Notes under the pieces: model-generated | The model's database searches: none | What the model saw: the letters and a program-made list of their open reading frames with translations, nothing else | What the model was told of the DNA's origin: nothing | Shown here: one piece after another, positions 17,363-40,300 of the stretch | Position numbering within the stretch: position 1 is the first letter of the stretch | How the letters are laid out: each line of letters opens with the position of its first letter | NCBI GenBank assembly: GCA_026770705.1 | Contig: JANJGN010000088.1 | Span: 930,001-994,000 of the forward strand | DNA length: 64,000 bases | Source of the DNA: Isurus oxyrinchus | Lineage: Eukaryota | Reading direction: 5' to 3' | Program-made: the position numbers and the translations under genes

Positions 17363-17745
17363 CTATGAACAGGATTTGAAGCCTTCAGTTAGAACAAGTG
17401 ACACATTGACCAGGGTGGGTTTGCTGTGAGATTTATTGATGCTCCTGAACAGACTTGTTGTGACTGACTCGTGTCCCACCACACAGGAGTAAGTGGTGCC
17501 GCTGTTCCACTCGTCTGCGGAGACTGTCAACTGACTGCCCGAGTTCCAGCCACTTCTGCCATCCTCGGTCACCGGCTGGTTCACAAATCCTGACTTCAGA
17601 AGGGTGTCGTTGGCCATCCAGGCCAGGTAGATCTCTGCAGGGGAGAATCCGGTGACCAGGCAAACCAGGGTCGCGGTGTGGTCTGTCTCCATCTCATCTT
17701 GCGAAGGGGGAAGGAGGTAGACTTGAGGGTGAGTCTTAATGTCAA
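17363..17745 (-). CDS. IgW: IgW CH6-type terminal exon (10th C domain) with canonical secretory tailpiece
   Basis: (V)DIKTHPQVYLLPPSQDE...TLVCLVTGFSPAEIYLAW...YSCVVGHES...NKSHSKPTLVNVSLVLTEGFKSCS*. NVS sequon and penultimate Cys. Confidence 0.94.
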
Positions 17746-18812: not shown

Positions 18813-19133
18813 CTTGGGCTTTCCTGATTGACCTCTTCTCAGGCGTTGGCAAACTCTTGTCCTCCACCAAACACAAATACTCTACCCCACTCTCCCACTC
18901 TGCAGCAGGGACCATCAGTCTGCTGAAGATCATGTCTTTGTCTCCATTCCTCTTGGGACCCTGAGTCTTCACTCCATCTTCTCTCTTGATTCCATCCGCC
19001 TGCCAGGTTACCCTGACTCCCTCTAAATCACTGTGAAGTACCTCGCAAAGTATAGTCGCTGTCCTGTTCCTCCAGATCTCTTCAAAAGGAGGCTTCCTTA
19101 AGGTGACTGAGATCCCAGTGTCCAAACATTCAT
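18813..19133 (-). CDS. IgW: IgW CH5-type exon (9th C domain)
   Basis: 321 nt: (D)ECLDTGISVTLRKPPFEEIWRNRTATILCEV...YLCLVEDKSLPTPEKRSIRKAQ, donor G|gtacgt. Confidence 0.92.
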
Positions 19134-19981
19134 CTGGGAGAAAAATTATCATTGTTATTTCGTGATTCCCTCACGGGATGTGGACATGGCTTGCAAGGCT
19201 GGCATTTCATGCACATCGCCACATGTACAATAGTGGCTTGTTCGACTCTTTCAGAGGGCAGCTCTGCATCAGCCACATTGGTCTGTGCCTGTAGCCACAT
19301 CTGGGGCAGACAGGGTAAGGACAGCAGGTATCCTTCCCTCAAGGAAGATGAACAAACCTGTTGGGTTTTTAATGACAATCTAACGCCTTCAAGGTCACTT
19401 TACTGATTCTAACTTTTTATTACCAATTTTTACTTTCTGCAACTGAATTCAAATTCTCAAGCTGTCTTAGATTTGAACTCAGTTGTCTGCATTAGTGATT
19501 GTATATGTCAACCTTGGCACGTTGGTAGGGCAAGCTCCTCTACCTGCGATGGTTGTGCGTTCACGACCCACTACGGATACTTGAGCACAAAATCAAGAAT
19601 GACAAACCCCATGCCGATACTGAGGGAATGCGGCACTGTTGGGTATGCCGTCTCTCAGTAAGAGACATTAAGCCACGGCCCCTTCTCAGGCCAGCCAAAG
19701 AGATCACATTGTCGCCAATTTGGAAAAAAAGGGGAGAGGGGCCAAAATTTAACAGATTACCTGGTCTTCATCATAATGCAGTTTATCGGGCCTTGCCTTA
19801 TGCAAATTAGTTGACGCTTTCTTTGCATTGAAACAGTTACGACACCTCAACAAAAGTACTCTTTTGGCTGTGAGGCACATCCTGAGGATGTGAAAGCTAC
19901 AACATTAATGCTATTGTCTCTTTCTTTGTCCAGACCTCTAGAATATTAATCCACTCACATAGTCACTACATAACCACATAC

Positions 19982-20299
19982 CTTGGAAGTTCTTCACCGT
20001 CTCACTGGTGTTGAAGTTGGAGGGTGGATGAGACACTGCACAGGTGAAGTTTAAGCCTTTCCTCCACTCCTCTGCACTCACAGTCAGGTAGTGCCTGACG
20101 CAGAATGTCCCGGCCTGTTCCAGAGCAGTGTGTCCAGTGTGGGCCTTGGAGGAGATCAGAGCACCATCTTTCTCCCAGGTGACATTTATGAGGTCTGGGT
20201 AGAATCCAGTGATCACACACTCGAGTGTGGCTGTGCTCTTACCCTTGATCTCTTCAGTTGGTTGAAACAGCAATCTGACCTTGGGACTTTTTGGCTCGA
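19982..20299 (-). CDS. IgW: IgW CH4-type exon, copy c (8th C domain, more divergent)
   Basis: 318 nt: (V)EPKSPKVRLLFQPTEEIKGKSTATLECVITGFYPD...TFCVRHY...FTCAVSHPPSNFNTSETVKNFQ, donor G|gtatgt. Confidence 0.92.
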
Positions 20300-20389: not shown

Positions 20390-20692
20390 CTTTTACACTC
20401 TTTACCCATTTTGAAATGGGTGAGGATGAGGAACGACTTTGAGCAGAGCACACGAACTCCACCCCGCTGTCCCATTCCTCTGCAGTGGTTCGGAGTCGGC
20501 TGGTGACGATGTATTGGGTCCCTTCCTCTCTCTGTCGCTGGGTTGAAACCCCTTTACTTCGCTCCTGCCCGTTCATGTTCCAGGTGATGCGGACCTGGCT
20601 CGGATTGGAACAGACCACTGTACACACCAGGGTAGCTGTCTTGTTGATCCAAACCTCTTCCATAAGTGGACTTTGGATAAAGACAGATATTT
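20390..20692 (-). CDS. IgW: IgW CH3-type exon, copy c (7th C domain)
   Basis: 303 nt: (E)ISVFIQSPLMEEVWINKTATLVCTVVCS...SPISKWVKSVK. Intact splice sites. Confidence 0.92.
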
Positions 20693-21194: not shown

Positions 21195-21600
21195 TTAGCT
21201 GCGGCTCAGTTGATAGCACGCTCACCTCCAAATCAGAACGTTGTGGATTCATGTCCCACAAAACTCAAAGCTGATGCCCCAGTGCAATACTGAGGGAGTG
21301 CTGCACTGTCAGAGCACTGCCTTTTGGATGAGAATTGAAAATGAGGCGCCAAATGCCGGCTTAGGTAGGTGTAAAAGAAGGACATCAGGGAAGCTCGTTC
21401 CAATACCCTGATCAGTATATATCCCTCACTCAACATCACAAAAACAGGATCCCTGGTTATTGTCACATTACTCTTTGTGGGAACTTGCTGTGTGTAAATT
21501 GGCTGCTGTGTTTCCAACTTTAGAACAGTGGCTGCACTTCAAAAGTACTTCATTTTGGCATGTCCTGTGGTCACGAAAGATGACATGTAAATGTGAGCCT
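21195..21600 (+). mobile_element. tRNA-derived SINE-like element (paralogue at about 28022-28425; related copies at about 12950-13270 and 16415-16735)
   Basis: ggctcagttgatagcac A-box-like start, gtggattcatgtccca B-box-like motif, shared core with other copies. Confidence 0.55.
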
Positions 21601-23304
21601 TTCTTTACTTTTCTTCCTCTAATTGGAGCTGGCCTGGATCACATCAGTTTTAAAATTCTTATCCTAATGTTCACGGCTTCACCTCTCCCTATCCCTGTAA
21701 CCTTCTCCAGCCCTACAGCCGCCCAGAAACTCTGCACAACTCTAGACACTTGTACATCCTTATCTTCCTTTCCCCCTGCATTGGTGGCTGTGTCTTCAGC
21801 CGTCTAGGCCCTAATGCCTGGAATTCACTGCCTAAACCTCAGCCACCTGCCACCTCTCTCCTCATTTGAGGTGCTGCATAAAACCTCTCTATTTTGCCAA
21901 GATTTTGGCCACAAGATCTCCTCCTGGAGGCTCAGCATCAGTTTTGCTTTGGCTTTGGTCCTGTGAAGCACCTTGGGATGTTTTACTACATTAAAGTCTC
22001 TATATCGATTCAAGTTATCATTGGTGATCATTCCCTGTCAAAGAAGGTTAGTTTTCATTGGCAGAGCAACTCCCATGAATCAGGGGAGTAACAGAAGTCC
22101 CCTCTTCCTGCAGGTTGGTGATCATTTCTGCATAACACGGACTTCCCCTCATTTCATTCCGGAGTTTACTGGCCTGGGAAGGGAATGATTGATTGAATTC
22201 TTCACACTTTCTCCTTGGTGCTCAACTCCCATGGATCGCAACCTTTTCAGATATCCCGCAGCTCACTGCGTGTTCTGTATACTGTTAACACAGACACACA
22301 CGCATATACACACAGACACACACATGCACACACACATTCACTGCGTGAATCACAACTGCTTTGATCCACACTAATTGTTCTCTCACGATGTAATGTTAAC
22401 ACTTACAGAGTGACTGGATTACTCCATCTGTGTCCATATCAAAACCTGTCATGAACACCACATATTGACTCTTCCGGCTGCAGTTTCAGCTGATGTTCAG
22501 TGTCTGTCTAATAGGACTGTGTCTTTTATTAGGTTATTTATTCTGTTTCTCTCTCTCTTGCCTTTTAAACAAAACCTTGATCAATTTCCTTCCAGATTGG
22601 GATTGCTCAATATATTAATGATTAAGTCTAGGTGTTTTTCACGTTGATCTCCCATCATAAAACCTCATAGGGTTGGGAACAATCCCCTTATCACTGTAAA
22701 ATAATAACATTATTGGGCAAGAGGTGTTTAATTCCATTTACCCTTTGTGCGGAATTTTGAAAAAACACTTCCCTGCCTTGGATTCCTGTGAACATTGAGC
22801 TCCTGACATTGACTGAGATGAGTATCCAGATTGGGAGAGTGATGGGAACTGTTTCTATTTCTGCAACCCAGAATTTCATTTAAAACAGACCAGGCCATTC
22901 AGGACACCAGTTAAATCCTTGTGTGCTGAATCACCAACTTGCCTCAGGATCATTGAAGGGGGCCAATCCGGCTATTTCACTGGATCAATGAGTCCTACTC
23001 CAGCACCTCCCAACCTCCTGGCCTCTCTGGGTGACAAACAGGCTTCTAATCCTTTCCAACTTGAGAGTCAGACTTGAGAGACAATGGTCAGTCGGTGGGG
23101 TCGGGTCCCTATTCACTCTGACCCAGCGCAGGTCACAAAGAAATGACCATTCAGATAAGGAGTGGGTTGTCTGGGGGAACCCAACCTAGGGCTGTAACTT
23201 CTCGCAGTATTCACACTTTCATTCTGACGGATACCCTGGGATACATTTGAACCTGCCAGATGGTTTGTAATAAAATTCAGCGACCAATTCCATTCACAAA
23301 CTCA

Positions 23305-23462
23305 TCACTTTATTTCACATTTTTGTTGGTAGCAGTCATATTGGAGCTGATCACCATTTTTGAGGGTCACATTGAGGTTAGTCTGGTAGAGAAACTTCGG
23401 CATACAGTCAGAACAAGAACAAGGAGAACTTGGAACTGGACGACATGCGTTTCCACCTGGAA
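23305..23462 (-). CDS. IgW: Cys-rich secretory tail exon T3 (copy of T1)
   Basis: 158 nt: (V)PGGNACRPVPSSPCSCSDCMPKFLYQTNLNVTLKNGDQLQYDCYQQKCEIK*. 6 Cys; acceptor and overlapping AATAAA intact. Confidence 0.85.
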
Positions 23463-23835
23463 CTGGAAGAGTTGCAGATTTAAGTGTTATGCATTTTCAC
23501 CTCCCCTCCCCTCTACTGGGGAAGTGGGAGCTCCATGCAGCCCCTGGCCTCTGCTCTGTCCTGTCTTCTAAAGATCCTAAAAGAACTAGATCATGTAGAC
23601 ACTGACAAGCTGTTTTTACCTTGTCCAGAACAGTAAAATCAGTGGGTATGGCCTCTGTTTGAAGGGGGCAGGATGAACAATCGTTCTTTCTTTACTTGGC
23701 CTCTAGATTACTCGTCCACCTAGGTAATAACTACATCACCACACCGACGTTGTGAGGTTTGAATTTGCCTGGCCCCAAGAGAATTTATATGAGAAGACCA
23801 TGATGTCAATATTGGAATCAGGCCCAGGACCTTAC

Positions 23836-24153
23836 CTGGGACATTTTTCACCTCCTTGCTGATGACGAAGTTGGAAAGTGGATGAGACACTGTACAGCTG
23901 AAGGCTGATCCTGTCCTCCACTCCTCTGCACTCACAGTCAGGTAGTGCCTGACATTGAAGGTCCCTGCCTGTTCCAGAGCGGTGAGTCCAGCATGGGTGT
24001 TGGAGGAGATCGGAACACCATCTTTCTGCCAGGAGACGTGTAAGAGCTCCGGGTAGAATCCAGTGATCACACACTCGAGTGTGGCTGTGCTCTGGTTCTT
24101 GACCTCTTGGGCTGGGGGAGGCAGCAGCCTGACCTTGGGACTTTTTGGCTCGA
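23836..24153 (-). CDS. IgW: IgW CH4-type exon, copy b (6th C domain)
   Basis: 318 nt, nearly identical to CH4a (DGVP vs DGAP). Intact splice sites. Confidence 0.92.
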
Positions 24154-24243
24154 CTGGAATAGACAGGCAAAACAAAGAAGCTGTTAAATTCCTTCCCTGA
24201 AAGTGAACAAAGTTAGTTATGTAATTTCTGATCTCTCACCCAC

Positions 24244-24546
24244 CTTTTACACTCTTTGCCCGTTTTGAAATGGGTGAGGATGAGGAACCACTTTGAGCAG
24301 AGCACACGAACTCCACCCCGCTGTCCCATTCCTCTGCAGTGGTTCGGAGTCGGCTGGTGACGATGTATTGGGTTCCTTCCTCTCTCTGTCGCTGGGTTGA
24401 AACCCCTTTACTTCGCTCCTGCCCGTTCATGTTCCAGGTGATGCGGACTTGGCTCGGATCTGAACAGACTACTTTACACACCAGGGTAGCAGTCTTGTTG
24501 ATCCAAACCTCTTCAACAGAAGGATTTTGGATAAAAACTGACATTT
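24244..24546 (-). CDS. IgW: IgW CH3-type exon, copy b (5th C domain)
   Basis: 303 nt: (E)MSVFIQNPSVEEVWINKTATLVCKVVCSD...KRAKSVK. Intact splice sites. Confidence 0.92.
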
Positions 24547-26258
24547 CTGGGAAGCAGAAAGTGAAAACTTTAGAAGGATTGACGTTATTTGGTGTTGGCA
24601 GGCTTCAGAATTTTAGGGTGGTGTCTCCCTACTGATGTTGGTGGATGATAGGTCAACACAGAAGTGACTTTAAACTGCCACCTGTTTTAATCTCTTGAGT
24701 TGATACTGGGTGAAATACACAGCATTTAAGTTTGCAGCAAACTGAGCCTTTAGAAAATCCAAGGGTCGCTTTAGCAATGTCTAGCAATTCTTGACTCGCA
24801 TGTTATGATTGAGAAAACATAATCAGAGCACTAAGAACCTGCCGTATCCATTTTGAATTTGTTTGCTGTGCCTGTGACCAATAGGCCCACAGTGAGGAGT
24901 GCAAATTGCATTCTAGGACTGAGCAACATTTAGATGTGACACTGTGAATCAATTGCAAAGCCCAGTTTGTTAAATGGAGTGAGGCAGATGCAGATCGCTT
25001 AGCAATGGAAACAATTGAATAAAGGCTTATTTACTTACAGCCCCTCCACCTCCCCGCTGTTGTATGGTTGATTTGTGACATTGAACAGATTGAATCAATG
25101 AGTTGCCCTTTTTGGAGACAGCCTTGGATTGCCTCCATTTCAAAATCCTTATCCTAGTGTTGACATCTCGCTGGCCTTGCCTCTCCATATCTCTGTCACA
25201 TTTGCCAGCCCAATAACCGTCTGAAAATGCTGCTTTCCACCAACATTAACCTCTTGTACACCCCACACTCCCTTCGCCCTAACAGTAGCAGCTGTCCATC
25301 AGCCATCTAGACCCTGCTCTGTGTAAGTCTATCCCTGAATCACAATTACATGGCCAACCCTCTCTCCTCCTTTAAGACGCTCCATAAAAACGACCTCTGC
25401 CCCCGCCTCCTCCTTTGGTTCTTTATCAATTTCTGTCCGATTACTCTCCAATGCAGAACTTTAGACCTCTGTCCACACTAAAGGTGATATATAAAAGCAG
25501 GTTATTGTAGATAAGTCTCTGTGAAGATAGATGATTAGTGTGCAGTGGCAGAGCAAGCCACAAATCAGATGTAGTGACAGCTCCTTTGCTGGAGCTCGGG
25601 GATAATTTATGCAAAACGTTTACATCCCATCTCCAGTTTCATGTCCAAGAGACTAGATAAAAAGCAAATGTTTTACCGAGTACTTCATACGTTTTCCCCA
25701 TTGCCAGCAGTTTCCCAAAAGACCATTGTCACTTCAGATATCCCGCAGCTCACTGCGTGTTCTGAACACTATTCACGCGCACAAACACACATTCACTGTG
25801 CGAATCACAACACTTCTCCCTCTATATAATGAACAGTAGACACTTGGGTATGATGGGAAGGATGACAATTACTGCATCAGGATCAAATCCTTTCATGAGC
25901 TTCGAGAACCAACTCCTCCGGCTGCAGTTTCAGATGATGTCCTGTACACAGGGTGGTGGGATTTTCCAATGGCCATTTGGGTGGCTCGCCACATCTGCTG
26001 CAGAGGGACCCACTGCAGTGGAGCCAGAAAATCCTGGCCAGTGTCTGACAAGACCCTATCTTTCATTAACTTGAGATGGGTGAACGGAAGAGTTTATCAC
26101 TTCTGCTGCCATGGATTTCCATCCAGAACCTACCGGATTGTACAGGAGCCAGATGGAACCCTGCAGCCGGTCTCAGCGGTTTGCCTCAGGACCAGAATCA
26201 TTGAAATGGGACAGCCTTCTTTTACTGGATCAACGCGATTCAATTCACAACCAGCCCA

Positions 26259-26437
26259 TCATCGAATTTCACACATTTGTTGACAACATTTATACTGGCA
26301 TGGATCAGCATCAGAGAAGGTCATGTTACAGTTAATCTGATATAGGAACCTCAGCATCCAGCCAGAACAAGAATCAGTCAGACAAGAGCAAGCAGCATTT
26401 CCACCCGGAACAGGAAGATTTGTGTTTCCACCTAGAA
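26259..26437 (-). CDS. IgW: Divergent Cys-rich secretory tail exon T2
   Basis: ccag acceptor, phase 1, open frame: (V)LGGNTNLPVPGGNAACSCLTDSCSGWMLRFLYQINCNMTFSDADPCQYKCCQQMCEIR*. Clearly homologous to T1. Confidence 0.78.
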
Positions 26438-26809
26438 CTGGAAGAGCTGCGGATTTAAGTGTTATGCATTTTCACCTCCCCTCCCCTCTACTGGGGAAGT
26501 GGGAGCTCCATGCAGCCCCTGGCCTCTGCTCTGTCCTGTCTTCTAAAGATCCTAAAAGAACTAGATCATGTAGACACTGACAAGCTGTTGTTACCTTGTC
26601 CAGAACAGTAAAATCAGTGGGAATGGCCTCTGTTTGAAGGGGGCAGGATGAACAATCGTTCTTTCTTTACTTGGCCTCTAGATTACTCGTCCACCTAGGT
26701 AATAACTACATCACCACACCTACGTTGTGAGTTTGAATTTGCCTGGCCCCAAGAGAATTTATATGAGAAGACCATGATGTCAATATTGGAATCAGGCCCA
26801 GGACCTTAC

Positions 26810-27127
26810 CTGGGACATTCTTCACCTCCTTGCTGATGACGAAGTTGGAAAGTGGATGAGACACTGTACAGCTGAAGGCTGATCCTGTCCTCCACTCCTC
26901 TGCACTCACAGTCAGGTAGTGCCTGACATTGAAAGTCCCTGCCTGTTCCAGAGCGGTGAGTCCAGCGTGGGTGTTGGAGGAGATTGGAGCACCATCTTTC
27001 TGCCAGGAGACGTGTAAGAGCTCCGGGTAGAATCCAGTGATCACACACTCGAGTGTGGCTGTGCTCTGATTCTTGACCTCTTGGGCTGGTGGAGGCAGCA
27101 GCCTGACCTTGGGACTTTTTGGCTCGA
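26810..27127 (-). CDS. IgW: IgW CH4-type exon, copy a (4th C domain)
   Basis: 318 nt: (V)EPKSPKVRLLPPPAQEVKNQSTATLECVITGFYPE...FSCTVSHPLSNFVISKEVKNVP, donor G|gtaagg. Confidence 0.92.
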
Positions 27128-27216
27128 CTGGAATAAACAGGCAAAACAAAGAAGCTGTTAAATTCCTTCCCTGAAAGTGAACAAAGTTAGTTATGTAATT
27201 TCTATCTCTCACCCAC

Positions 27217-27519
27217 CTTTTACACTCTTTGCCCGTTTTGAAATGGGTGAGGATGAGGAACCACTTTGAGCAGAGCACACGAACTCCACCCCGCTGTCCC
27301 ATTCCTCTGCAGTGGTTCGGAGTCGGCTGGTGATGATGTATTGTGTTCCTTCCTCTCTCTGTCGCTGGGTTGAAACCCCTTTACTTCGCTCCTGCCCGTT
27401 CATGTTCCAGGTGATGCGGACCTGGCTCGGATTGGAACAGACCACTTTACACACCAGGGTAGCTGTCTTGTTGATCCAAACCTCTTCCATAAGTGGACTT
27501 TGGATAAAGACAGATATTT
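27217..27519 (-). CDS. IgW: IgW CH3-type exon, copy a (3rd C domain)
   Basis: 303 nt: (E)ISVFIQSPLMEEVWINKTATLVCKVVCS...EFVCSAQSGSSSSPISKRAKSVK, donor G|gtgggt. Confidence 0.92.
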
Positions 27520-30123
27520 CTGGGAAGGGGAAATTATACAAATCAGAAGAACGGGCATTATTTAGTATCAGCCACTTGTGGCCTTCAATCGGAACCCAGT
27601 TTAATGTGTTTCACCTGGAGCTGCTAATCGATCATGCGACACTGCACCTAAATATTTTAACAAGTTGAACATTAGAAAATCCCAGGGTTGTTTAAAAAAT
27701 GTCTTGCAATTCTCAGTTTGCAGGTTTTGACTGAGAAAACATCGTAGGACAACCAAGAACCCACTGGATCCCTTTTGAATCTGTCTGCCCTTACCATGAC
27801 CAAGAGATCCACAGTGAGGACTGCAGTTGAGTTGTGGGGTGAGTGGCTTTTTGATGCGACAATGTTACTAACAATGCAATCTCTGGTTTGTGAAATGGAG
27901 TGAAACAGAGATACAAACTGCTTAGCAAAAGGAACAATTCAGTAAATGCTTTTTCACTGCGCGGGGCTGTGGAATGATTTTTGACATTGAGCACACTGAA
28001 TGAACGAAGGGCCCATTTCTTTTAGCTGCGGCTCAGTTGGTAGCACGCTCACCTCCAAATCAGAACGTTGTGGATTCATGTCCCACAAAACTCAAAGTTG
28101 ATGCCCCAGTGCAATACTGAGGGAGTGCTGCACTGTCGGAGCACTGCCTTTTGGATGAGAATTGAAAATGAGGCGCCACATGCTGCCTTAGGTAGGCGTA
28201 AAAGAAGGACATCAGGGAAGCTTGTTCCAATACCCTGATCAGTATATATCCCTCACTCAACATCACAAAAACAGGATCCCTGGTTATTGTCACATTACTC
28301 TTTGTGGGGACTTGCTGTGTGTAAATTGGCTGCTGTGTTTCCAACTTTACATCAGTGGCTGCACTTCAAAAGTACTTCATTTTGGCATGTCCTGTGGTCA
28401 CGAAAGATGACATGTAAATGTGAGCCTTTCTTTACTTTTCTTCCTCTAATTGGAGCTGGCCTGGATCACATCAGTTTTAAAATTCTTATCCTAATGTTCA
28501 CGGCTTCACCTCTCCCTATCTCTGTAACCTTCTCCAGCCCTACAGCCGCCCAGAAACTCTGCACAACTCTTGTACATCTTTATCTTCCTTTCCCCCTGCA
28601 TTGGTGGCTGTGTCTTCAACCGTCTAGGCCCTAATGCCTGGAATTCACTGCCTAAACCTCAGCCACCTGCCACCTCTCTCCTCATTTGAGATGCTGCTTA
28701 AAACCTCTCTATTTTGCCAAGATTTTGGCCACAAGATCTCCTCCTGGAGGCTCAGCATCAGTTTTGCTTTGGCTTTGGTCCTGTGAAGCACCTTGGGATG
28801 TTTTACTACATTAAAGTCTCTATATCAATTCAAGTTATCATTGGTGATCATTCCCTGTCAAAGAAGGTTAGTTTGCATTGGCAGAGCAACTCCCATGAAT
28901 CAGGGGAGTAACAGAAGTCCCCTCTTCCTGCAGGTTGGGGATCATTTCTGCATAACAAGGACTTCCCCTCATTTCATTCCGGAGTTTACTGGCCTGGGAA
29001 GGGAATGATTGATTGAATTCTTCACATTTTCTCCTTGGTGCTCAACTCCCACTGATCACAATCTCTTCAGATATCCCGCAGCTCACTGCGTGTTCTGTAT
29101 ATTGTTAACACAGACACACACGCATATACACACAGACACACACATGCACACACACATTCACTGCGTGAACCACAACTGCTTTGATCCTCACTATTTGTTC
29201 TGTCTCGATTTAATGTTAACACTTACAGAGTGACTGGATTACTCCATCTGTGTCCATATCAAAACCTGTCATGAACACCACATATTAAGTCTTCCGGCTG
29301 CAGTTTTAGCTGATGTTCAGTGTCTGTCTAATAGGACTGTGTCTTTTATTAGGTTATTTATTCTGTTTCTCTCTCTCTTGCCTTTCAAACAAAACGTTGA
29401 TCAATTTCCTTCCAGATTGGGATTGCTCAATATATTAATGATTAAGTCTAGGTGTTTTTCACGTTGATCTCCCATCATAAAACCTCATAGGGTTGGGAAC
29501 AATCCCCTTATCACTGTAAAATAATAACATTATTGGGCAAGAGGTGTTTAATTCCATTTACCCTTTGTGCGGAATTTTGAAAAAACACTTCCCCGACTGG
29601 AATTCCTGTGAACATTGAGCTCCTGACATTGACTGAGATGAGTATCCAGATTGGGAGAGTGATGGGAACTGTTTCTATTTCTGCAACCCAGAATTTCATC
29701 TAAAACAGACCAGGCCATTCAGGGCACCAGTTAAATCCTTGTGTGCTGAATCACCAACTTGCCTCAGGATCAATGAAGGGGGCCAATCCAGCCATTTCAC
29801 TGGATCAATGAGTCCCACTCCAGCACTTCCCAACCTCCCGGCCTCTCTGGGTGACAAACAGGCTTCTAATCCTTTCCAACTTGAGTCAGACTTGAGAGAC
29901 AATGGTCAATCGGTGGGGTCGGGTCCCTATTCACTCTGACCCAGCGCAGGTCACAAAAAAAATGACCATTTAGATCAGGAGTGGTTTGTCTGGGGGAACC
30001 CAAACTCGGGCTGTAACTTCTTGCAGTATTCACACTTTCATTCTGACGGATACCCTAGGATAGATTTGAACCTGCCAGATGGTTTGTAATAAAATTCAAT
30101 GGCCAATTCCATTCACAAACTCA

Positions 30124-30281
30124 TCACTTTATTTCACATTTTTGTTGGTAGCAGTCATATTGGAGCTGATCACCATTTTTGAGGGTCACATTGAGGTTAG
30201 TCTGGTAGAGAAACTTCGGCATACAGTCAGAACAAGAACAGGGAGAACATGGAACTGGACGACATACGTTTCCACCTGGAA
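30124..30281 (-). CDS. IgW: Cys-rich secretory tail exon T1 (short-form IgW tail)
   Basis: ccag acceptor, phase 1, hand translation (V)PGGNVCRPVPCSPCSCSDCMPKFLYQTNLNVTLKNGDQLQYDCYQQKCEIK*. 7 Cys, NVT sequon, AATAAA overlapping the last codons. Resembles the Cys-rich tail of 2-domain IgW/IgX. Confidence 0.88.
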
Positions 30282-30961
30282 CTGGAGGAGTTGCAGATTT
30301 AAGCGTTATACATTTTCACCTCCCCTACTCTGTGCTGGGCAAGTGGGAACTCCACACGGCCTCAAAACTCTGCTCAATCCTGTCTTTGCAGGATCCTAAA
30401 GGAACCTGATCAGGTGGACAATGAAAAGCTGGTTCACCTTGTCCAGAATAGGAAGATCAGGGGAAATGACTTCTGCTTGAAGGGGGAAGGGTGGGGGATT
30501 CAATTCAAAATTAATGCAGCAATAGATTGATCAATCTCTGGAACAGGTTCAGGAGACAGTGAAGCAGATCCATGCAATTCTTGCAAATGCAAAATTGGAA
30601 AGATTTCTTTCTTAATGCAGCACTTGGGAGGGAGTAGAAAAGGAAAAGTTAGGAGGCGATTTCAACCGTGGATGGTAATAGATAGGTCGGTATCAGATGG
30701 GATGTATCAGATGGATCATTTCACAGCCTGTCCCATTTTCATTTCTAGTCACAGAGAGTCACATTGAATGAGGCTGTAAACAAGCAGCTGACCCAATTCC
30801 AGCAGTTTCACTGCTTGCTACGTTAGGTTAAAATTACTCCCCTTAAGGGTAGCTTCAATAACAAAACACAAAATACTGAACATTCACCTTTCCCAACAGG
30901 GTTGATATTAGTGACAGCAATTCACAGATTGAGGGTGGGCGTTGGCACGTTAAGTTAATAC

Positions 30962-31190
30962 GACAAAAACAGAAAATGCTGGAAAAAACTCAGCAGGTCT
31001 GACAGCATCTGTGGGTAGAGAAACTGAGTTAACATTTCGAGCCCAATATGACTCTGAAGAAAGGCCACACAGACTCGAAACATTAACTCTGTTTCTCTCC
31101 CCACAGATGCTGTCAGACCTGATGAGTTTTTCCAACGTTTTTGTTTTTTTTTTAGTTTCCCAGCATCCGCGGTATTTTGCTTTTATCTTA
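30962..31190 (+). mobile_element. Penelope-like element hairpin remnant
   Basis: About 75-bp inverted repeat flanking ctgaaga...cgaaac; related half-copies at about 49065-49165 and 49560-49700. Confidence 0.6.
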
Positions 31191-31252
31191 ATTTAATACC
31201 AGTCTGCATTACTGATGATATATTCATTTCTCCCCCCTCAGGCACCACTTAC

Positions 31253-31561
31253 CCCCTTCGTTTCTCGTGTATCTCATGCTGATCCTCTTATTGAATCTTG
31301 AAGGTGTGTGGGACACTTCACAGGCGTACTCAACCCCTTTCTTCCATTCCACCACAGGAACAGTCAGGTAAGTGACTCTTTCGAATGTAGTGTCTGTGTT
31401 CTGTTGGGAAGGCAGAACAACACCCGTTTTGTCCTCCTGGCCTTTCTTCCAGGAAACCTTTATGCTGTCGGGATCAAATCCGGATATCATACAGCCCAGG
31501 ACAGTGGTAGTTTGATTGTAGACAAACTCCGCGGATGGAACAAGGGTGGTGACAATCGGCG
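31253..31561 (-). CDS. IgW: IgW CH2 exon
   Basis: 309 nt: (A)PIVTTLVPSAEF...LGCMISGFDPDSIKVSW...YACEVSHTPSRFNKRISMRYTRNEG, donor G|gtaagt. Confidence 0.93.
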
Positions 31562-31964: not shown

Positions 31965-33320
31965 CCCCAGTAACCTTTGACTCCCTTGTTAGTCAAGAAT
32001 CTATCTTCATCTGCCTTAAAAATATTCATTGTCCCTGTTTCCACCGCTCTCTGGGTAAGAGAGTTCCAAAGATTCACGACATCATGAGAGAAAAAGATTT
32101 CTTCTCATCTCCATCTTAAATGGGAGACCCCTTATTTTTAAACTGTTCCCCCAAGATCAAGTCTCTCCCACAAGGGGAAATGTCCTTTCAGCATCCGCCC
32201 TGTCAAGTCCCCTCAGGATCTGATATGTTTCAATGAGATCACCTCTCAATTTTCTAAACTCCAATGGATACAGGCCCAGCCTGTCCAACCTATCCTCATG
32301 AGATAACGCCCCCATCCCAGGTATCAATCGAGTGAACCTTCTTTGAACTGCTTCTAATGATTTAAACACTTTCCTAAATAAGCAAGACCAAAACTGGACA
32401 CTGTACCCTTGATGTGGTCCCACCAATGTCCCATACAACTGTAGCAAAACACCCCTACTTTTCTATTCCATTCGCATTGCAATAAGCAACAACATTCCAT
32501 TTGCCTTCTGAACCACTTGCTGTGTCTATATTCTAACTTCTCCTGATTCATGTACCAGGACACTCGGATCCCTCTGCTCTTCAGAGTTGTGCAGTCTCTC
32601 TCCATTTAAATAATATGCTGCTTTTCTATTCTTCCTGCCAAAGTAGACAAGTTCACATTTTCCCACGTTATACTCCATCTGCCAAATTTTTGCCACTCAC
32701 TTAACCTATGTCCCTTTGCAGACTCCTTATATCCTCTTCACAACTTACTTTCCTACCTTTCTCTGTGTCATCAACAAATTTAGGAACTATACATTCGGTC
32801 CCTTCATCCAAGTCATTGATATAAATTGTAAATATTTGAGGCCTCAGCACTGATCCCTGTGACACTCTAGTCATCACATCTGTTCAACACAAAGAAGATC
32901 CATTTGTCCCTATTCTCTGCTTCCTGTTAGCTAACCAATACTCCATCCATGCTAATATATTTCCCCCTACACCAGGAGCTCTTATTTTGCATCATAATCT
33001 TTTATGTGGCATCTTGTCAGATGCCTTCTGGAAATCTAAGCACAGCACATCCACAAGTTCCCCTTTATGGATGTTGCTTGTTACTTACTTATAGAACTCC
33101 AATAAATTAGTTAAACATGATTTCTCTTTCACAAAGCCGTGTTGATTCTGCCTCATTGCATTGAGATTTTCTAAGTGCCCCGCTATAACTACTTTAATAT
33201 CAGATTCCAGCAGTTTCCCTACAAGAGATTTTAATCAAACTGGCCTGCAGTTTTCTGCTTTCTGTCTCCTTCCTTTCTTGAAGAGAGGCATCACAGTCAC
33301 TATTTTACAATCTGATGGGA
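31965..33320 (-). mobile_element. Decayed CR1 RT fragment
   Basis: LVGPHQGYSVQFWS...VQRRFTRLIPG...RGDLIETY. Confidence 0.85.
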
Positions 33321-33511: not shown

Positions 33512-33826
33512 CTTTAGGTTTCGTGATCTGACGCTCCACCATTTCATTTGACTTGTAACCCGCCTTACAGTGGTAGACTGTATTGGCATTCCAATCTGAT
33601 GCAGAGATTTTGAGCACGCTGCTCATCATGTAATTCTTATCATTCCCCTGGACTGCCGCATATGTCTGAATTCCAGTGGTAATGACCCGATTGTTACTGG
33701 ACCATATCAGAGTGATGCTCTTAGGATGAAAGTCCTTGACCAGGCAGAAGAAGCTGATCTCATCTTGGTCCCTGTCCATGCCACAGGAAGGGTTGGGGAT
33801 GTAGACCGATGGTGCAGACTGGGCAA
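33512..33826 (-). CDS. IgW: IgW CH1 exon
   Basis: 315 nt, phase 1/1: (V)[41 protein letters not shown]...[22 protein letters not shown]1-set motifs plus the PSC cysteine at the light-chain-pairing position. Confidence 0.93.
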
Positions 33827-34014
33827 CTGAAATATAAATAGTTTCACACAGATAAGCCTAGTAAAGAAACACATACAAATATATGAACTAGGAGCAGGAG
33901 TGGGCCTTTTGGCCCTTTTGGCCCTGCTCTGCCATTTGATAATGGCTGATCTGATTGCAGCCTCAATCTACTTTCCTGTCTACCCTCTTTCACCTTTGAC
34001 TCCCTTGTTACTCA

Positions 34015-34995
34015 GTGTAGAGGGAGCTTTACACTGTATCTAACTGCGAGCCGTACCTGTCCTGTGTGTGTTTGATGGGGACAGTGTAGAGGGAGCTTTA
34101 CTCTGTATCTAACCGCGAGCTGTACCTTTCCTGGGTGTGTTTGATGGGGACAGTGTAGAGGGAGCTTTGCTCTGTACCTAACCCCGTGCTATACCTGTCC
34201 TGGGAGTGTTTGATGGGGACAGTGGAGAGGGAGCTTTACACTGTATCTAACCGCGAGCTGTACCTGTCCTGGGTGTGTTTGATGGGGATGATGTAGAGGG
34301 AGCTTTACTCTGTGTCTAACCCCGTGCTGTACCTGTCCTGGGAGTGGTTGTTGGGGACAGTGTAGACGGAGCTTTACTCTGTATCTAACCCCGAGCTGTA
34401 CCTGTCCTGGGTGTGTTTGATGGGGACAGTGTAGAGGGAACTTTACACTGTATCTAACCGCGAGCTGTACCTGTCCTGGGTGTGTTTGATGGGGACAGTG
34501 TAGAGGGAGCTTTACTCTGTATCTAACCGCGAGCTGTACCTGTCCTGGGTGTGTTTGATGGGGACGGTGTAGAGGGAGCTTTACTCTGTATCTAACCCCG
34601 TGCTGTATCTGTCCTGGGAGTGTTTGATGGGGACAGTGTAGAGGGAGCTTTACTCTGTATCTAACCCTGTGCTGTACCTGTCCTGGGAGTGTTTGTTGGG
34701 GACAGTGTAGAGGGAGCTTTACTCTGTAGACAACCCTGTGCTGTATCTGTCCTGGGAGTGTTTGATGGAGACAGTGAAGAGGGAGCTTTACTCTGTATCT
34801 AACCCCGTGCTGTACCTGTCCTGGGAGTGTTTGATGGGGACAGTGAAGAGGGAGCTTTACTCTGTATCTAACCCCGTGCTGTACCTGTCCTGGGAGTGTT
34901 TGATGGGGACAGTGTAGAGGGAGATTTACTCTGTATCGAACCCCATGCTGTTCTTGTCTTGGGAGTGTTTGATATGATGGTGTAGAGGGAGATTT
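34015..34995. repeat. 69-bp tandem repeat, about 14 copies
   Basis: gtgtttgatggggacagtgtagagggagctttactctgtatctaaccccgtgctgtacctgtcctggga; explains the 23-aa periodic ORF. Confidence 0.95.
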
Positions 34996-35089
34996 ACTAA
35001 AATTGTACAATCCTAGGGAGCATGGCAGTTCAGAGGGAGTTTTATTCAGTATCTCAGTGTCATAGATGATGGGGAGGATTTATACTAAC

Positions 35090-38000
35090 TTGGCAGGGGG
35101 ATGGGATCCTGTGAGGAGGTTCAGCAGGGAAAGATGCACAGCCAAAATTAGAAGAGAGAGCAAGTGGGTGAGGAAGGCATACAAATTATAGGCCAGTTAA
35201 GGCACAATGGAGTTTGGCAAGGTTGGATGGTATTTATTTTAATGCAAGGAGTCTGACGAATCAGGCAGATGAGTTGAGGACATAAATTGACACATGGAAG
35301 CATGATGTCATTGCTGTCACAGAGACATCATGGTTGAGAGAGGGGCAGGATTGGCAGCTCAATAATCCAGGATGTAGGGTCTTCGGGTGAGATAGGGAAG
35401 GAGGTAAAAGAGGAATGGGTATCGCATTATTGATCAAGGAATCAATTACAGCAGTAAGGAGGGATGACATCTTAGAAGGCTCCTCTAATGAAGCCATATG
35501 TGTAGAACCTAAAAACAAAAAAGAGACAATCACATTGCTGGGAGTGTGCTATAGGCCCCCAAACAGTCAGAGAGAAATATGAGAGAGAGCAGATATGTAG
35601 GCAAATTTCAGAGAAGTGTAAAAGTAATAGAGGAGTAATGGTGAGGGATTTCGACTTCCCCAACGTTAACTGGGTTAGTCATAGTGTGATAGGTTTAGAG
35701 GGAGTGGAATTCTTAAAATGCATCCAGGAGAGCTTTTTAAGCCAGTACGTAGAAGGTTCTACAAGAGAGGGGGCGGCCCTGGACTTAATTTTAGGGAATG
35801 TAACCGGGCAAGTGGTAGAGGTATCAGTGGTGGAGATAGCGATCATAACTCCGTTAGATTCAAGGTTCTTATGGAAAAGGACAAGGATGGGCCAGAAATC
35901 ATAATTCTAAATTGGGGGAAGACCGATTTTAATAAGATCAGGTATGGTTTGGCCAGAGTGGACTGGGAGCAGCTACTTTTAGGCAAATCTGCTTCAGAGC
36001 AGTGGAACTTATTCAAGAAAGAAATAGGGAGAGCACAGGGCCAACATATTCCAGTAAAGATAAAGGGTGGGACCAACAAATCCAGGGAACTCTGGATGTT
36101 GAAGGATATACAGGATTGGAGAAAGAGAAAAAGGGAGGCTTATGGCAGATACCGAGGGCTCAAAACACAGAAGCCCTAGAGTATAGAATGTGTAGGGGGA
36201 AACTTAAAAAGGAAATTAGGAGAGCAAAAATGAGGCATGAGAAAACGTTGACAGGTTAAAATAAAGGAAAATCCAAAGTTATTTTACAAGTACATTAAGA
36301 GTAAAATGATAACTCGGAAAGAGTAGGGCCCATAGTGGTAATTTGTGTGTGGAGCCAGAAGACATAGGTAGGGTTCTAAATGAATACTTTGTGTTGATGT
36401 TGACAAGTGAGAGGGATGACATGGGTATGGAAAACAGGCAGAAGGACTGAGATATGATTAAAGAAATTAGCATCGTTCTAAGTGGCCAGGCAGGCTTAAA
36501 AGTAGATAAATCTCCAGGCCCAGATGAAATGTATCCTAGGCTGTTGAGTGAGGCAAGGGAGGAGATAGCAGGGGCGCTGGCAATAATTTTCAATACTCCC
36601 TAGCCACAGGAGAGGTACCAGAGGACTGGAGGACGGCCAATGTGATACTGTCATTCAAGATGGGAGGCAGGCATAAACCAGGGAACTACAGGCCAGTCAG
36701 TCTAACCTCAGTGGTGGGGAAACTATTGGAAGCAATTCTGAGGGACAGAATTAATCTACACTTGGAGAGACAGGGATTAATCAAGGACAGAGAGAATGGT
36801 TTTGTTAAGGGGAGGTCATGTCTGACCAATTTGTCTGAATTTTTCAAAGAGGTGACCAGATGTGTAGATGATGGCAATGCATTTGACATTGCCTACTTAG
36901 ACCTCAGCAAGGCTTTTGATAAGGTCCTGCATGAGAGACTGATAATGAAGGTAAGAGCCCATGGGATCCAAGGCAATTTGGCAAATTGGATCCAGAATTG
37001 GTTGAGTGGCCGGAAGCAGAGGGTGATGGCTGAGTCCAGTGGGGTTCCACAGGGATCGGTCTTGGGTCCCTTGCTGTTTGTGGTGTATATAAACGATTTA
37101 GACGTGAATGTAGGAGGGTTGATCAGTAAGTTCGCAGATGACACGAAAATTGGTGGGGTGGTAAATAGTGAGGAGGATAACTTTAGATTCCAGATGGACA
37201 TAGATGGGCTGGTCAGATGGGCTGATTAGTGGCAAATGGATTTTAATCCGGATAAGTATGAGGTGATGCACTTGGGCAGGACAAACAAGGCACGGGAAGT
37301 ATATTCATATAGCAAGCAATGTTTTAAGTGTTAGTGCCAGCATTTTGTAGTAAACTGCATATTTTTACTATGCACAGAAGGAGCTGAAATGTACAGTATT
37401 TATAGAAAATGTCAACATTGATAGCCAATTGCAATGTTAGATCTTATTAAACGGTACCATTGAATGGTAGGACCCTGGGAAGAACCGAGGATCAGAGGGA
37501 CCTTGGTGTGCATGTCCAACGGTCCCTTAAGGTAGCGGGACAGGTAGATAAGGTGGTTAGGAAGGCATATGGGATACTTTGCTTTATTAGCCAAGGCAGA
37601 GAATATAAGAACAGGGATGTTATGCTGCAACTATAAAAAACGCTGGTTAGGCCACAGCTAGAGTATTGCGTGCAGTTCTAGAATCCGTATTGTAGGAAGG
37701 ATGTGATTGCACTCGAGAGAGAGCAGAGGACATTTACCAGGATGTTGCCTGGGCTGGAGAGTTTTAGTTATGAGGAGAGATTGGATAGACTGGGGTTATT
37801 TTCCCTGGAGCAGAGGAGATTGAGGGGGGACGTGATTGAGGTATATAAAATGATGAGGGGCTTAGATGGGGTAGACAGGAAGGAACATTTCCCCTTGGTG
37901 GAGGGATCATTAACCAGGGGGCATAGATTTAAAGTAAGGGGCAGGAGGTTTAGAGGGGATGTGAGGAAGACTTTTTTCACCCAGAGGGTAGTGGGAATCT

Positions 38001-38210
38001 GGAACTCATTGCCTGAAAGGGTGGTAGAGGCAGAAATCCTCATAACATTTAAGAAGTATTTGGATGTGCACTTGCAATGCCATGGCATAGAAGGCTATGG
38101 GCCTAGTGCTGGAAAATGGGATTAGAATGGTTAGGTACTTGTTTGACCGGCGCAGACTCAATGGGCTGAAGGGCCTTTTTCTGTGCTGTAGACCTCGCTG
38201 ACTCTAAGAC
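35090..38210 (+). mobile_element. Near full-length decayed CR1 ORF2 in the J-CH1 intron
   Basis: DFDFPNVNW, NYRPVSLTSVVGK, GVPQGSVLGP, KFADDTK, TQRVVGIWNSLP. Confidence 0.9.
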
Positions 38211-38989: not shown

Positions 38990-40300
38990 ACATTCGGACA
39001 AGATGCTGATCAATAAGTAACATTCACCCCACACAGGTGCCAGGCAATGACCATCTCCAACAAGAGAGAATCTACCCTCATCCCTTGACATTCAATGGCA
39101 TTGCTGTCGCTGAATCCCCCACTATCAACATCTTGGGGATTACCATTGACCAGAAACTGAGCTAGATCATACTGTGGCTACAAGAGCAAGTTAGATACTG
39201 GGAATCCTGTGGAGAGTAACTCACCTCCAGACTCCCCAACCTGTCCACCATCTACAAGGCACAATTCAGGAGTGTGATGGGATACTCTCCACTTGCCTGA
39301 ATGAGTGCAGCTCCCACAACATTCGAGAAGCTCGACACCGTCCAGGACAAAGCAGCCCCACTTGATTGGCACCTCACCCACAAACATTCACTTCTTCGAC
39401 CACTGACGCACAGTGGCAGCAGTGTGCGTACCATCTAAAAGATGCACTGCAGGAACTCACCAAGGCTCCTCAGACAGCACCTTCCAAACCCACGACCACT
39501 ACCATCTAGATGGACAAGGGCAGCAGACACATGGGGAACACCCACCTCCTGGAAGTTTCTCTCCGAGCCCCTCACCTTCCCGACTTGGAAATATATCGGC
39601 TGTTCCTTCACTGTCGCTGGGTCAAAATCCTGGAACTCCCTCCCTAACAGCGCTGTGGGTGTACCTACACCACAGGGACAAAATTATGGAACTCCCTCCC
39701 TAACAGCACTGTGGGTGTACCTACACTACAGGGGACAAAATCCTGGAACTCCCTCCCTAACAGCGCTGTGGGTATACCTACACCACGGAGACAAAATCCT
39801 GGAACTCCCTCCCTAACAGCGCAGTGGGTGTACCTACACCACAGGGGACAAAATCCTGGAACTCCCTCCCTAACAGCGCGGTAGGTATACCTACAACTCA
39901 CGGACAAAATCCTAGAACTCCCTCCCGAACAGCGCCGTGGATGTCCCTACACCACACAGGGGACAAAATCCTGGAACTCCCTCCCTAACAGCGCTGTGGG
40001 TGTACCTACACTACAGGGGACAAAATCCTGGAATTCCCTCCCTAACAGCGCTGTGGGTGTACCTACACCACAGGGGACAAAATCCTGGAACTCCCTCCCT
40101 AACAGCACTGTGGGTGTACCTACACCACAGAGACAAAATCCTGGACCTCCCTCCCTAACAGCGCTGTGGGTGTACCTACACCACATGGACTGCAGCGGTT
40201 CAAGAAACCAGCTTACCACCACCACCTCTAGGGGCAATTAGGGATGGGCAATAAATGCTAGCCTGACCAGCGAAGCCCACATCCCATAAATGAATGAAAA
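38990..40300 (+). mobile_element. Second-family LINE 3' part with an internal 56-57-bp tandem amplification (about 39620-40185)
   Basis: About 10 copies of caaaatcctggaactccctccctaacagcgctgtgggtgtacctacaccacaggga, single-copy in other family members. Confidence 0.85.

What the first reader, a model, noticed from the sequence alone, without database searches (positions are those of the whole stretch)
23305..30281. Hidden array of three Cys-rich secretory tail exons: a modular antibody length and tail selector
Seen: three homologous terminal exons missed by the ORF track, after C domain 2 (T1), 4 (T2) and 6 (T3). Each has an acceptor in phase with the preceding CH exon, an N-x-T sequon, 6-8 cysteines and a CEIK*/CEIR* end; the canonical tailpiece follows domain 10. 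Established: short IgW ends in a Cys-rich tail after CH2. Inference: the duplicated unit is tail+CH3+CH4, so one VDJ could be secreted as 2C-T1, 4C-T2, 6C-T3 or 10C-canonical by alternative terminal exon choice. That would give isotype-like effector diversity from RNA processing alone. This is the strongest candidate for an undescribed system in the window.
Basis: partly seen in the sequence, partly recalled or inferred. Interest (0 to 1): 0.9.

Follow-up and report, generated by a model that had tools for sequence, protein, structure and literature searches.

The report
Three secretory tail exons in shark IgW
A catshark IgW antibody gene really does carry three copies of the short Cys-rich "secreted tail" exon between its constant-domain exons, but interspersed tail exons that give antibodies of different length are already described in nurse shark, and use of the second and third copies is unproven here.

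Summary
On the minus strand, three homologous short exons lie after CH2, CH4a and CH4b of a ten-C-exon IgW cluster: T1 30281-30124, T2 26437-26259 and T3 23462-23305. Each has a phase-1 acceptor, an N-x-T sequon, 6-8 cysteines and a CEIK*/CEIR* end.

A profile of the three tails hit only known IgW-short secretory tails among 1.84 billion proteins (E 1e-17 and 3e-16). T1 is the orthologue of that tail.

T3 is a recent chimera. It has T2's upstream flank and T1's body, and keeps an AATAAA embedded in its last codons.

T2 is open but sits on a branch seven times longer than the median. It has lost that AATAAA and T1's downstream sequence, and no contig covered it in four RNA-like runs.

Those runs showed a T1/T3-type tail spliced at the predicted acceptor. 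They also showed a CH4a-to-CH3b junction that skips T2.

The idea is not new. Reviews report nurse-shark secreted IgW forms with 2, 4, 6 or 8 C domains made by alternative splicing. Zhang et al. 2013 (from memory, not readable here) describe two interspersed secretory exons per cluster.

Verdict: a new, expanded member of a known kind. The scan's only other note on these exons is a re-read of this same stretch.

The parts
33512..33826 (-). CH1 exon
   Evidence: The acceptor tttcag|tt at 33827/33826 was read. The donor AAAG|GTTAGT, with last exon base 33512, was read. It is phase 1.
31253..31561 (-). CH2 exon. Its donor G|GTAAGT is in phase 1.
   Evidence: Boundaries were read. The exon is 62-69% identical to the CH2 of horn-shark and sawshark IgW short forms.
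30282..30496 (-). About 215 nt of intron flank upstream of T1, homologous to the flank upstream of T2 and T3
   Evidence: It is 78% identical to 26438-26653 with one 1-nt gap. Similarity stops further upstream.
30124..30281 (-). T1: secretory tail exon after CH2 (52 codons plus stop, 7 Cys, NVT, CEIK*)
   Evidence: Defined. It is 66-70% identical to known IgW-short tails.
30128..30133 (-). AATAAA poly(A) hexamer embedded in the last codons of T1 (GAA ATA AAG TGA), followed by a GT-rich stretch
   Evidence: Found; the sequence is shown.
27217..27519 (-). CH3a exon
   Evidence: Contigs end at 27520 and at 27217. It is 97.7% identical to CH3c.
26810..27127 (-). CH4a exon, with donor CAG|GTAAGG in phase 1
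   Evidence: X1 contig record 2 ends exactly at 26810 and continues at 24546. It is 97.8% identical to CH4b.
26259..26437 (-). T2: divergent tail exon after CH4a (59 codons plus stop, 8 Cys, NMT, CEIR*). It has no canonical poly(A) hexamer.
   Evidence: - Defined.
- About 49% identical to known tails.
- Terminal branch 0.76 against a median of 0.11.
- Only an AGTAAA, 33 nt past the stop.
- Depth 0 in four runs.
24244..24546 (-). CH3b exon
   Evidence: X1 contig record 2 joins 26810 to 24546. The first 30 nt are divergent and the rest resembles CH3a.
23836..24153 (-). CH4b exon, with donor CAG|GTAAGG in phase 1
23465..23490 (-). Approximate recombination breakpoint that makes T3 a chimera
   Evidence: In a sliding three-way identity scan, T3 matches T2 at 97-100% upstream of about 23480. 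From about 23470 downstream it matches T1 at 93-100%.
23305..23462 (-). T3: tail exon after CH4b (52 codons plus stop, 6 Cys, NVT, CEIK*). AATAAA lies at 23314-23309.
   Evidence: Defined. It differs from T1 in the exon at three bases, giving V>A, C>S and one silent change. X3 contig record 8 lies on 23321-23463 with 27 further letters upstream.
20390..20692 (-). CH3c exon
19982..20299 (-). CH4c exon. It is the divergent CH4 copy and is followed by CH5, not by a tail exon.
   Evidence: It is 83-84% identical to CH4a and CH4b. No tail homologue lies in 19152-19981.
18813..19133 (-). CH5 exon
   Evidence: Boundaries were read.
17363..17745 (-). CH6 exon with the canonical secretory tailpiece
   Evidence: Read. 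The next AATAAA lies 333 nt downstream.

Best explanation
The window holds one germline IgW (IgD-orthologue) heavy-chain cluster of a catshark on the minus strand. Its order is V, CH1, CH2, T1, CH3a, CH4a, T2, CH3b, CH4b, T3, CH3c, CH4c, CH5, CH6 with tailpiece, then two TM cassettes.

T1, T2 and T3 are copies of the separate secretory exon that ends the known two-domain IgW-short chain.

Inferred mechanism: they act as alternative last exons.
- The phase-1 donor of CH2 or CH4 can splice to the rather weak tail acceptor. The transcript is then cleaved at the tail's own poly(A) site, giving a short secreted chain with a Cys-rich, N-glycosylated tail.
- Or the donor splices past the tail to the stronger CH3 acceptor, giving a longer chain.

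Status of each copy:
- T1 is the functional orthologue.
- T3 arose recently by unequal recombination or gene conversion at the tail acceptor. It has T2's flank and T1's body. All its signals are intact, so it is probably usable and would give a six-domain form.
- T2 is an older copy that evolved fast. It lost the embedded AATAAA and T1's downstream sequence, so it is weak or decaying.

The system is the same kind as the interspersed secretory exons of nurse-shark IgW clusters, expanded by one more CH3-CH4-tail unit.
For: Shown:
- Three homologous ORFs in phase with the preceding donors.
- The tail profile hits only IgW-short tails in 1.84e9 proteins: Swiss-Prot P83743/P83742 of horn shark and 'splenic IgW, short secretory form-like' of sawshark.
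- The same tail ends 2C forms in nurse shark, skates and sawfish.
- Window CH2 is 62-69% and T1 66-70% identical to those proteins.
- AATAAA sits inside the last codons of T1 and T3.
- T3 is a chimera, within repeat units of 94.8% and 91.2% identity.
- A contig is spliced exactly at the predicted T acceptor, boundary 23463.
- A contig joins 26810 to 24546, so the b unit is spliced into mRNA.
- T1-T2 dN/dS is 0.34, and T2 keeps most core motif residues.

Literature: secreted forms with 2, 4, 6 and 8 C domains by alternative splicing, and six to eight C exons per nurse-shark cluster (PMC4279169, PMC5192425, PMC6795676).
Against: - No transcript shows CH4a->T2 or CH4b->T3.
- T2 had zero contig depth in four runs, although contigs drop rare forms.
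- The tail contig carries the T1 state at 23430 and the T3 state at 23447 and 23422. It may therefore be a CH2->T1 product of another allele or cluster.
- T3 is too young for its open frame to show selection.
- T2's open frame has a 13-26% chance under neutral drift.
- The runs are only guessed to be RNA, although exon-exon joints argue that they are.
Confidence: 0.6

Rival explanations
1. All three tails are in regular use, so one VDJ is secreted as 2C-T1, 4C-T2, 6C-T3 and 10C-tailpiece. T2 would give a chemically distinct tail with 8 Cys.
For: - All three frames are open, with phase-1 acceptors.
- T2 keeps FLYQ, the sequon, QY-x-C and C-E-I of the pan-elasmobranch motif.
- T2 is collinear with the horn-shark tail, with no frameshift.
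- dN/dS is 0.34.
- Four-domain secreted IgW exists in other sharks (PMC4279169).
Against: - T2 lost the embedded AATAAA and shares no sequence with T1 past the stop.
- T2 lost a conserved Cys (C>W), Pro, Gly and the terminal Lys.
- Its branch is about 7 times the median.
- No contig lay on T2, while a junction that skips T2 was seen.
Confidence: 0.2
2. Only T1 and the CH6 tailpiece work. T2 and T3 are silent passengers carried along by segmental duplication of CH3-CH4 blocks and are always spliced over.
For: - T3 belongs to a 3.7 kb repeat of 94.8% identity, so its integrity needs no selection.
- T2 signals are degraded.
- A CH4a->CH3b splice was seen.
- The only tail contig may be a CH2->T1 product.
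Against: - T3 has the same acceptor context, coding body, AATAAA and GT-rich downstream stretch as the functional T1. The CH4b donor is like the CH2 donor, so nothing visible would stop its use.
- Nurse shark uses a secretory exon after C4 (recalled from Zhang 2013).
- T2's frame and core motif survived a dS of about 0.8.
Confidence: 0.17
3. The triplicated CH3-CH4-tail array is an assembly artefact from an over-expanded repeat. The real gene would have fewer units.
For: Short-read DNA runs hold only about 0.39 of the stretch's words. The repeats are 91-95% identical.
Against: - The copies differ at many fixed positions and have distinct introns of 2.5 kb and 1.6 kb.
- CH3b has a unique 5' end.
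- T2 is unique in sequence.
- A contig bridges CH4a->CH3b with 0 mismatches on one side and 4 on the other.
Confidence: 0.03

Closest known systems
Nurse-shark IgW (omega) clusters with interspersed secretory exons (Zhang, Du Pasquier & Hsu, J Immunol 2013;191:3410). The paper is cited in PMC4279169 and PMC5192425. I recall its abstract but could not open it.
   Same: - One V-D-J cluster carries CH3-CH4 block duplications, six to eight C exons in nurse shark.
- Separate secretory exons lie between C exons, in addition to the tailpiece on the last C exon.
- Secreted isoforms of 2, 4, 6 and 8 C domains arise by RNA processing.
   Different: This cluster has ten C exons and three interspersed tail exons. 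The third is a T2/T1 chimera. The second has lost the canonical poly(A) hexamer. Usage of the second and third is not shown. Whether T2 is homologous to the nurse-shark post-C4 exon could not be tested.
IgW-short / IgX-short two-domain secreted chains: Swiss-Prot P83742 and P83743 of Heterodontus francisci, 'immunoglobulin IgW short' of Ginglymostoma cirratum, and skate IgX
   Same: CH2 is followed by a Cys-rich tail with the motif C..C.P.F.YQ..N.T....QY.C....C[EK]IK. T1 is 66-70% identical to these tails and sits directly after CH2.
   Different: Those entries are cDNAs or proteins with one tail after CH2. Here the tail exon is seen in germline DNA, in three copies, two of them after CH4-type exons.
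Mammalian IgD separate secretory exon and the mu-s/mu-m choice (own knowledge)
   Same: The 3' end is chosen by competition between splicing and cleavage/polyadenylation. IgD, the orthologue of IgW, also encodes its secreted end on a separate exon.
   Different: In mammals the choice is between one secreted and one membrane end after a fixed set of C domains. Here the choice would also set the number of C domains.
Teleost and sturgeon IgD with repeated C-delta blocks (PMC5192425)
   Same: Tandem duplication of pairs or triplets of C exons within one gene gives transcripts of varying length.
   Different: Those repeats are not reported to carry their own terminal secretory exon inside each block.

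Membership tests
IgW-short secretory tail exon | Sequence homology to tails of characterised IgW-short / IgX-short chains | tested here: met
   The profile of T1-T3 hit P83743 (E 1.5e-17) and sawshark IgW short (E 3.2e-16) as the only true hits in 1.84e9 proteins. blastp gave T1 66-70%, T3 64-67% and T2 about 49% identity. The motif is shared with nurse shark, skates and sawfish.
IgW-short secretory tail exon | Lies downstream of CH2 of an IgW cluster and is joined in frame to the CH2 donor | tested here: met
   T1 lies 971 nt (30282-31252) downstream of the CH2 donor. The G|GTAAGT donor and cag|tt acceptor are both phase 1. Window CH2 is 62-69% identical to IgW CH2.
Interspersed secretory exons of IgW clusters (nurse-shark type) | Further secretory exon(s) placed after a CH4-type exon inside the C-exon array, in phase with its donor | tested here: met
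   T2 follows CH4a by 372 nt and T3 follows CH4b by 373 nt. The donors are CAG|GTAAGG in phase 1 and the acceptors cag|tt.
Interspersed secretory exons of IgW clusters (nurse-shark type) | Own cleavage/polyadenylation signal at the end of each tail exon | tested here: inconclusive
   T1 and T3 have AATAAA overlapping the last codons, plus GT-rich downstream sequence. T2 has no AATAAA or ATTAAA within 500 nt, only AGTAAA at +33.
Interspersed secretory exons of IgW clusters (nurse-shark type) | mRNAs that end in each tail exon, joined to the preceding C exon | tested here: inconclusive
   One contig is spliced at the T1/T3-type acceptor, but its upstream exon was not identified. No contig lay on T2. 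A CH4a->CH3b junction is present. These are contigs only, from one call.
Interspersed secretory exons of IgW clusters (nurse-shark type) | Orthology of T2 to the nurse-shark post-C4 secretory exon | not testable with these tools
   The primary paper is not held.

The most novel reading that the evidence does not exclude
All three tails are used, so a single catshark VDJ is secreted in four lengths (2, 4, 6 and 10 C domains). The fast-evolving T2 would give the four-domain form a different disulfide and polymerisation behaviour. In addition, the near-invariant C-terminal [EK]-I-K of elasmobranch IgW-short tails would be held constant because its codons double as the AATAAA poly(A) signal. T2's EIR end would then mark a switch to another 3'-end signal.
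Probability: 0.2. Interest if true: 0.5.

Novelty: new member of a known kind. Interest (0 to 1): 0.3.

Why it matters
IgW/IgD is the least understood ancient antibody class, and how its many length forms arise and what they do remains open.

This locus gives exact germline coordinates for three tail exons and all splice junctions in a catshark. It shows how unequal recombination at the tail acceptor builds new CH3-CH4-tail units. It also offers a natural comparison: T1, its near-copy T3 in a CH4 context, and a degraded T2. That comparison could be used to test what makes an alternative last exon usable.

It does not reveal a new principle. The modular length selector is already described for nurse shark.

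Tried and rejected
- **Database search for 4C-tail or 6C-tail proteins.** The HMMER profile search found only 2C-tail architectures. The word-index searches found nothing beyond 2C forms. These used the sawshark tail region, T1 by reference and the whole sawshark short form. The length window and the missing catshark annotation make this uninformative.
- **The primary paper.** Zhang et al. 2013 could not be opened by PMC id, PubMed id or DOI. Full-text searches for 'secretory exon(s)' with IgW returned nothing.
- **Pfam on the tails.** No family matched.
- **AlphaFold2 on T1 with six aligned tails.** Mean pLDDT was 55, and only a small three-strand sheet in the C-terminal half reached about 70. 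That is too weak for a fold search, so none was run.
- **A fourth tail after CH4c.** None exists.
- **Chance open frame in T2.** Simulation gives 13-26%, so the open frame alone proves nothing.
- **A single-crossover history.** One T2 x T1 unequal crossover predicts the order T1, hybrid, T2. The observed order is T1, T2, hybrid. At least two events are needed, and I did not resolve them.
- **Joined protein models.** Exons were searched one by one by reference.
Full report
**What is there**

The window carries one germline immunoglobulin heavy-chain cluster on the minus strand. A VH ORF lies at 44450-44097. Ten Ig C-domain ORFs lie between 33.8 kb and 17.4 kb, and the last one ends in the usual tailpiece ...PTLVNVSLVLTEGFKSCS*.

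tblastn and blastn of T1 and T2 against the whole window found no fourth copy, and none between CH4c and CH5.

**Exon boundaries and phase**

I read the boundaries from the sequence. On the minus strand the exons are:

| Exon | Coordinates |
|---|---|
| CH1 | 33826-33512 |
| CH2 | 31561-31253 |
| T1 | 30281-30124 |
| CH3a | 27519-27217 |
| CH4a | 27127-26810 |
| T2 | 26437-26259 |
| CH3b | 24546-24244 |
| CH4b | 24153-23836 |
| T3 | 23462-23305 |
| CH3c | 20692-20390 |
| CH4c | 20299-19982 |
| CH5 | 19133-18813 |
| CH6 with tailpiece | 17745-17363 |

- Every C-exon donor is in phase 1 and ends in G.
- Each tail has a short pyrimidine run and a cag|tt acceptor, so the junction reads G+TT (Val) in frame. 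A second AG 6 nt later is also in phase 1.
- Because all donors share the phase, any upstream C exon could in principle join any downstream tail.
- The tail acceptors have poorer pyrimidine tracts than the CH3 and CH4 acceptors. This is read directly from the sequence, and fits regulated, skippable last exons.
- The tails have 7, 8 and 6 cysteines, and the sequons NVT, NMT and NVT.

**What the tails are**

A profile of the three tails was searched against 1.84 billion representative proteins. It gave two real hits. Two further rows, at E 2e-4 and 6e-4, are a low-complexity repeat protein and a zinc-finger protein.
- Swiss-Prot P83743, 'IgW chain C region, secreted form 2', of the horn shark. 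Its cluster-mate is P83742.
- 'Splenic IgW, short secretory form-like' of the Japanese sawshark.

In both proteins the match is the C-terminal tail directly after CH2.

A further search brought in more two-domain chains that end in the same tail. These are nurse-shark 'immunoglobulin IgW short', skate IgX-type short chains and sawfish proteins.

The alignment shows a motif shared across elasmobranchs: C..C.P.F.YQ..N.T....QY.C....C[EK]IK. Window CH2 is 62-69% identical to the CH2 of these proteins. T1 is 66-70%, T3 64-67% and T2 about 49% identical to their tails.

T1 is thus the orthologue of the established IgW-short tail exon. Earlier notes of this scan call the genome a catshark; I did not verify the species.

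**How the array arose**

Self-comparison shows two overlapping repeat registers.
- 19979-23675 matches 26807-30493 at 94.8%. This register covers the tail body, a 2.5 kb intron, CH3 and CH4.
- 23287-24593 matches 26238-27566 at 91.2%. This register covers CH3, CH4 and the flank before the tail.

A three-way sliding comparison shows that T3 is a chimera.
- Everything upstream of about 23480 is 97-100% identical to the sequence upstream of T2.
- Everything from about 23470 downstream is 93-100% identical to T1 and its downstream intron.
- The exchange point therefore sits at the tail acceptor.

CH4a and CH4b are 97.8% identical, while CH4c is only 83-84% identical to them. CH3a and CH3c are 97.7% identical. 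CH3b has a divergent first 30 nt.

A single T2 x T1 unequal crossover would put the hybrid before T2, which is not the observed order. At least two recombination or conversion events are needed, and I leave the exact history open.

Homology between T1 and T2 starts about 215 nt upstream of the exon, at 78% identity with one 1-nt gap. It ends at the stop codon, and the downstream sequences are unrelated.

**Are the copies fit for use?**

- **T1 and T3.** Both carry a canonical AATAAA inside their last codons (GAA ATA AAG TGA), followed by a GT-rich stretch. T3 differs from T1 in the exon by three bases: V>A, C>S and one silent change. Its open frame is too young to show selection, but all its signals are intact.
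- **T2.** It reads GAA ATT CGA TGA, so the hexamer is gone. The nearest variant is an AGTAAA 33 nt past the stop.
- **Signs of past constraint on T2.** It is collinear with the horn-shark tail, including the NLPVPGGN segment that T1 has lost. It keeps FLYQ, the sequon, QY-x-C and C-E-I. T1-T2 dN/dS is 0.34 with dS 0.82.
- **Signs of decay or change in T2.** It has lost a conserved Cys (to Trp), a Pro, a Gly and the terminal Lys. In a tree of twelve tails it falls inside the shark group, but on a branch of 0.76 against a median of 0.11. P0011 and P0012 were left out of that tree because they have no tail. Under neutral drift at the observed divergence its frame would stay open 13-26% of the time.

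T2 was probably constrained for part of its history. It is now either weakened or doing something different.

**Transcript evidence**

One search found runs that hold parts of the stretch, and one laying call was allowed. Four runs, guessed to be RNA and kept as contigs, were laid on 23200-29199.

1. **X1 record 2.** It joins 26925-26810 (no mismatch) directly to 24546-24407. This is the CH4a donor spliced to the CH3b acceptor. T2 is skipped and the b unit enters mRNA.
2. **X3 record 9.** It joins a CH3 exon to a CH4 exon at the predicted sites. Its mismatch pattern suggests CH3c-CH4c or another cluster.
3. **X3 record 8 (170 nt).** It lies on 23463-23321 and has 27 more letters upstream of 23463. 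That is exactly the predicted first acceptor.
   - It carries the T1 state at 23430 and the T3 state at 23447 and 23422.
   - It shows that a T1/T3-type tail is spliced and expressed. It does not show CH4b->T3, and it may be a CH2->T1 product of another allele or cluster.
4. **T2.** No contig lay on it in any run. Contigs drop rare forms, so this is weak negative evidence.

**What is known**

Reviews held in the library make three relevant statements (PMC4279169, PMC5192425, PMC6795676).
- Nurse-shark IgW clusters carry six to eight C exons.
- At least seven secreted forms with 2, 4, 6 or 8 C domains are made by alternative splicing.
- The 2C form has a long Cys-rich tail unlike any other Ig tail.

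They cite Rumfelt 2004, Smith 2012 and Zhang, Du Pasquier & Hsu 2013. I recall the abstract of the last paper as saying that two interspersed secretory exons, in addition to the 3'-most C exon with tailpiece, let a cluster make at least six secreted isoforms. The paper could not be opened here, so that wording rests on memory.

The 'modular length and tail selector' is therefore a described system. What this locus adds:
- a third tail exon and a ten-exon array in a catshark;
- the chimeric origin of T3;
- the degraded state of T2.

**Structure of the tail**

Pfam has no family for it. AlphaFold2 with six aligned tails gave mean pLDDT 55, with a small three-strand sheet in the C-terminal half and a disordered Cys-rich N-terminal half. 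I ran no fold search on so weak a model.

**Limits**

**Verdict**

This is a new, expanded member of a known kind, of modest interest.

Noticed in passing
window 30128-30133 and 23309-23314 (minus strand): The AATAAA poly(A) hexamer is formed by the last codons of the tail (E-I-K: GAA ATA AAG). All other elasmobranch IgW-short tails seen here end in [EK]IK (nurse shark KIKL). The conserved end may therefore be constrained at the RNA level as well. T2, the only tail ending EIR, has lost the hexamer.
   Followed up: partly
window 15680-15540 and 12200-12060 (minus strand): Two near-identical TM1-type exons lie downstream of CH6, about 3.5 kb apart. Both encode ...NALTVAAFAILFILSFLYSTFVTVVK, so there are two membrane cassettes, as another first-stage note says.
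   Followed up: partly
window 30282-30496, 26438-26653, 23463-23675 (minus strand): The roughly 215 nt of intron just upstream of each tail exon is conserved between T1 and T2 at 78% with one 1-nt gap. That is better than the exon itself (71%) and better than synonymous sites (dS 0.82). It could reflect gene conversion or a splicing/polyadenylation control element.
   Followed up: partly
window 28000-28800 and its twin about 21200-21980: A high-copy interspersed repeat lies inside the T-to-CH3 intron. Contig depths there reach thousands to tens of thousands in all four runs, with many loose ends and false joints.
   Followed up: no
window 34013-34998 and about 39400-40240: Two long tandem arrays lie in the V-to-CH1 interval. 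The first has a 69-nt period and 84-91% identity between copies. Their role is unknown.
   Followed up: no
window 35400-38130 (+ strand) and 32150-32880 (minus strand): Reverse-transcriptase-like ORF fragments lie in the J-CH1 and CH1-CH2 introns. The call is from motifs in the ORF translations, and no family search was run. They look like decayed LINE-type insertions.
   Followed up: no
protein P0011 (Cetorhinus maximus, 'pancreatic IgW, short secretory form-like'): This annotated basking-shark protein has CH1 and CH2 very like the window's. After ...ISMRYQE it runs into an unrelated peptide instead of the Cys-rich tail. The gene model probably missed the tail exon.
   Followed up: no
X3 contig record 8 on window 23321-23463: The expressed tail contig mixes T1 and T3 states: T1-like Cys codon at 23430, T3-like bases at 23447 and 23422. 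This suggests a further allele or another IgW cluster with the same tail in this species.
   Followed up: partly
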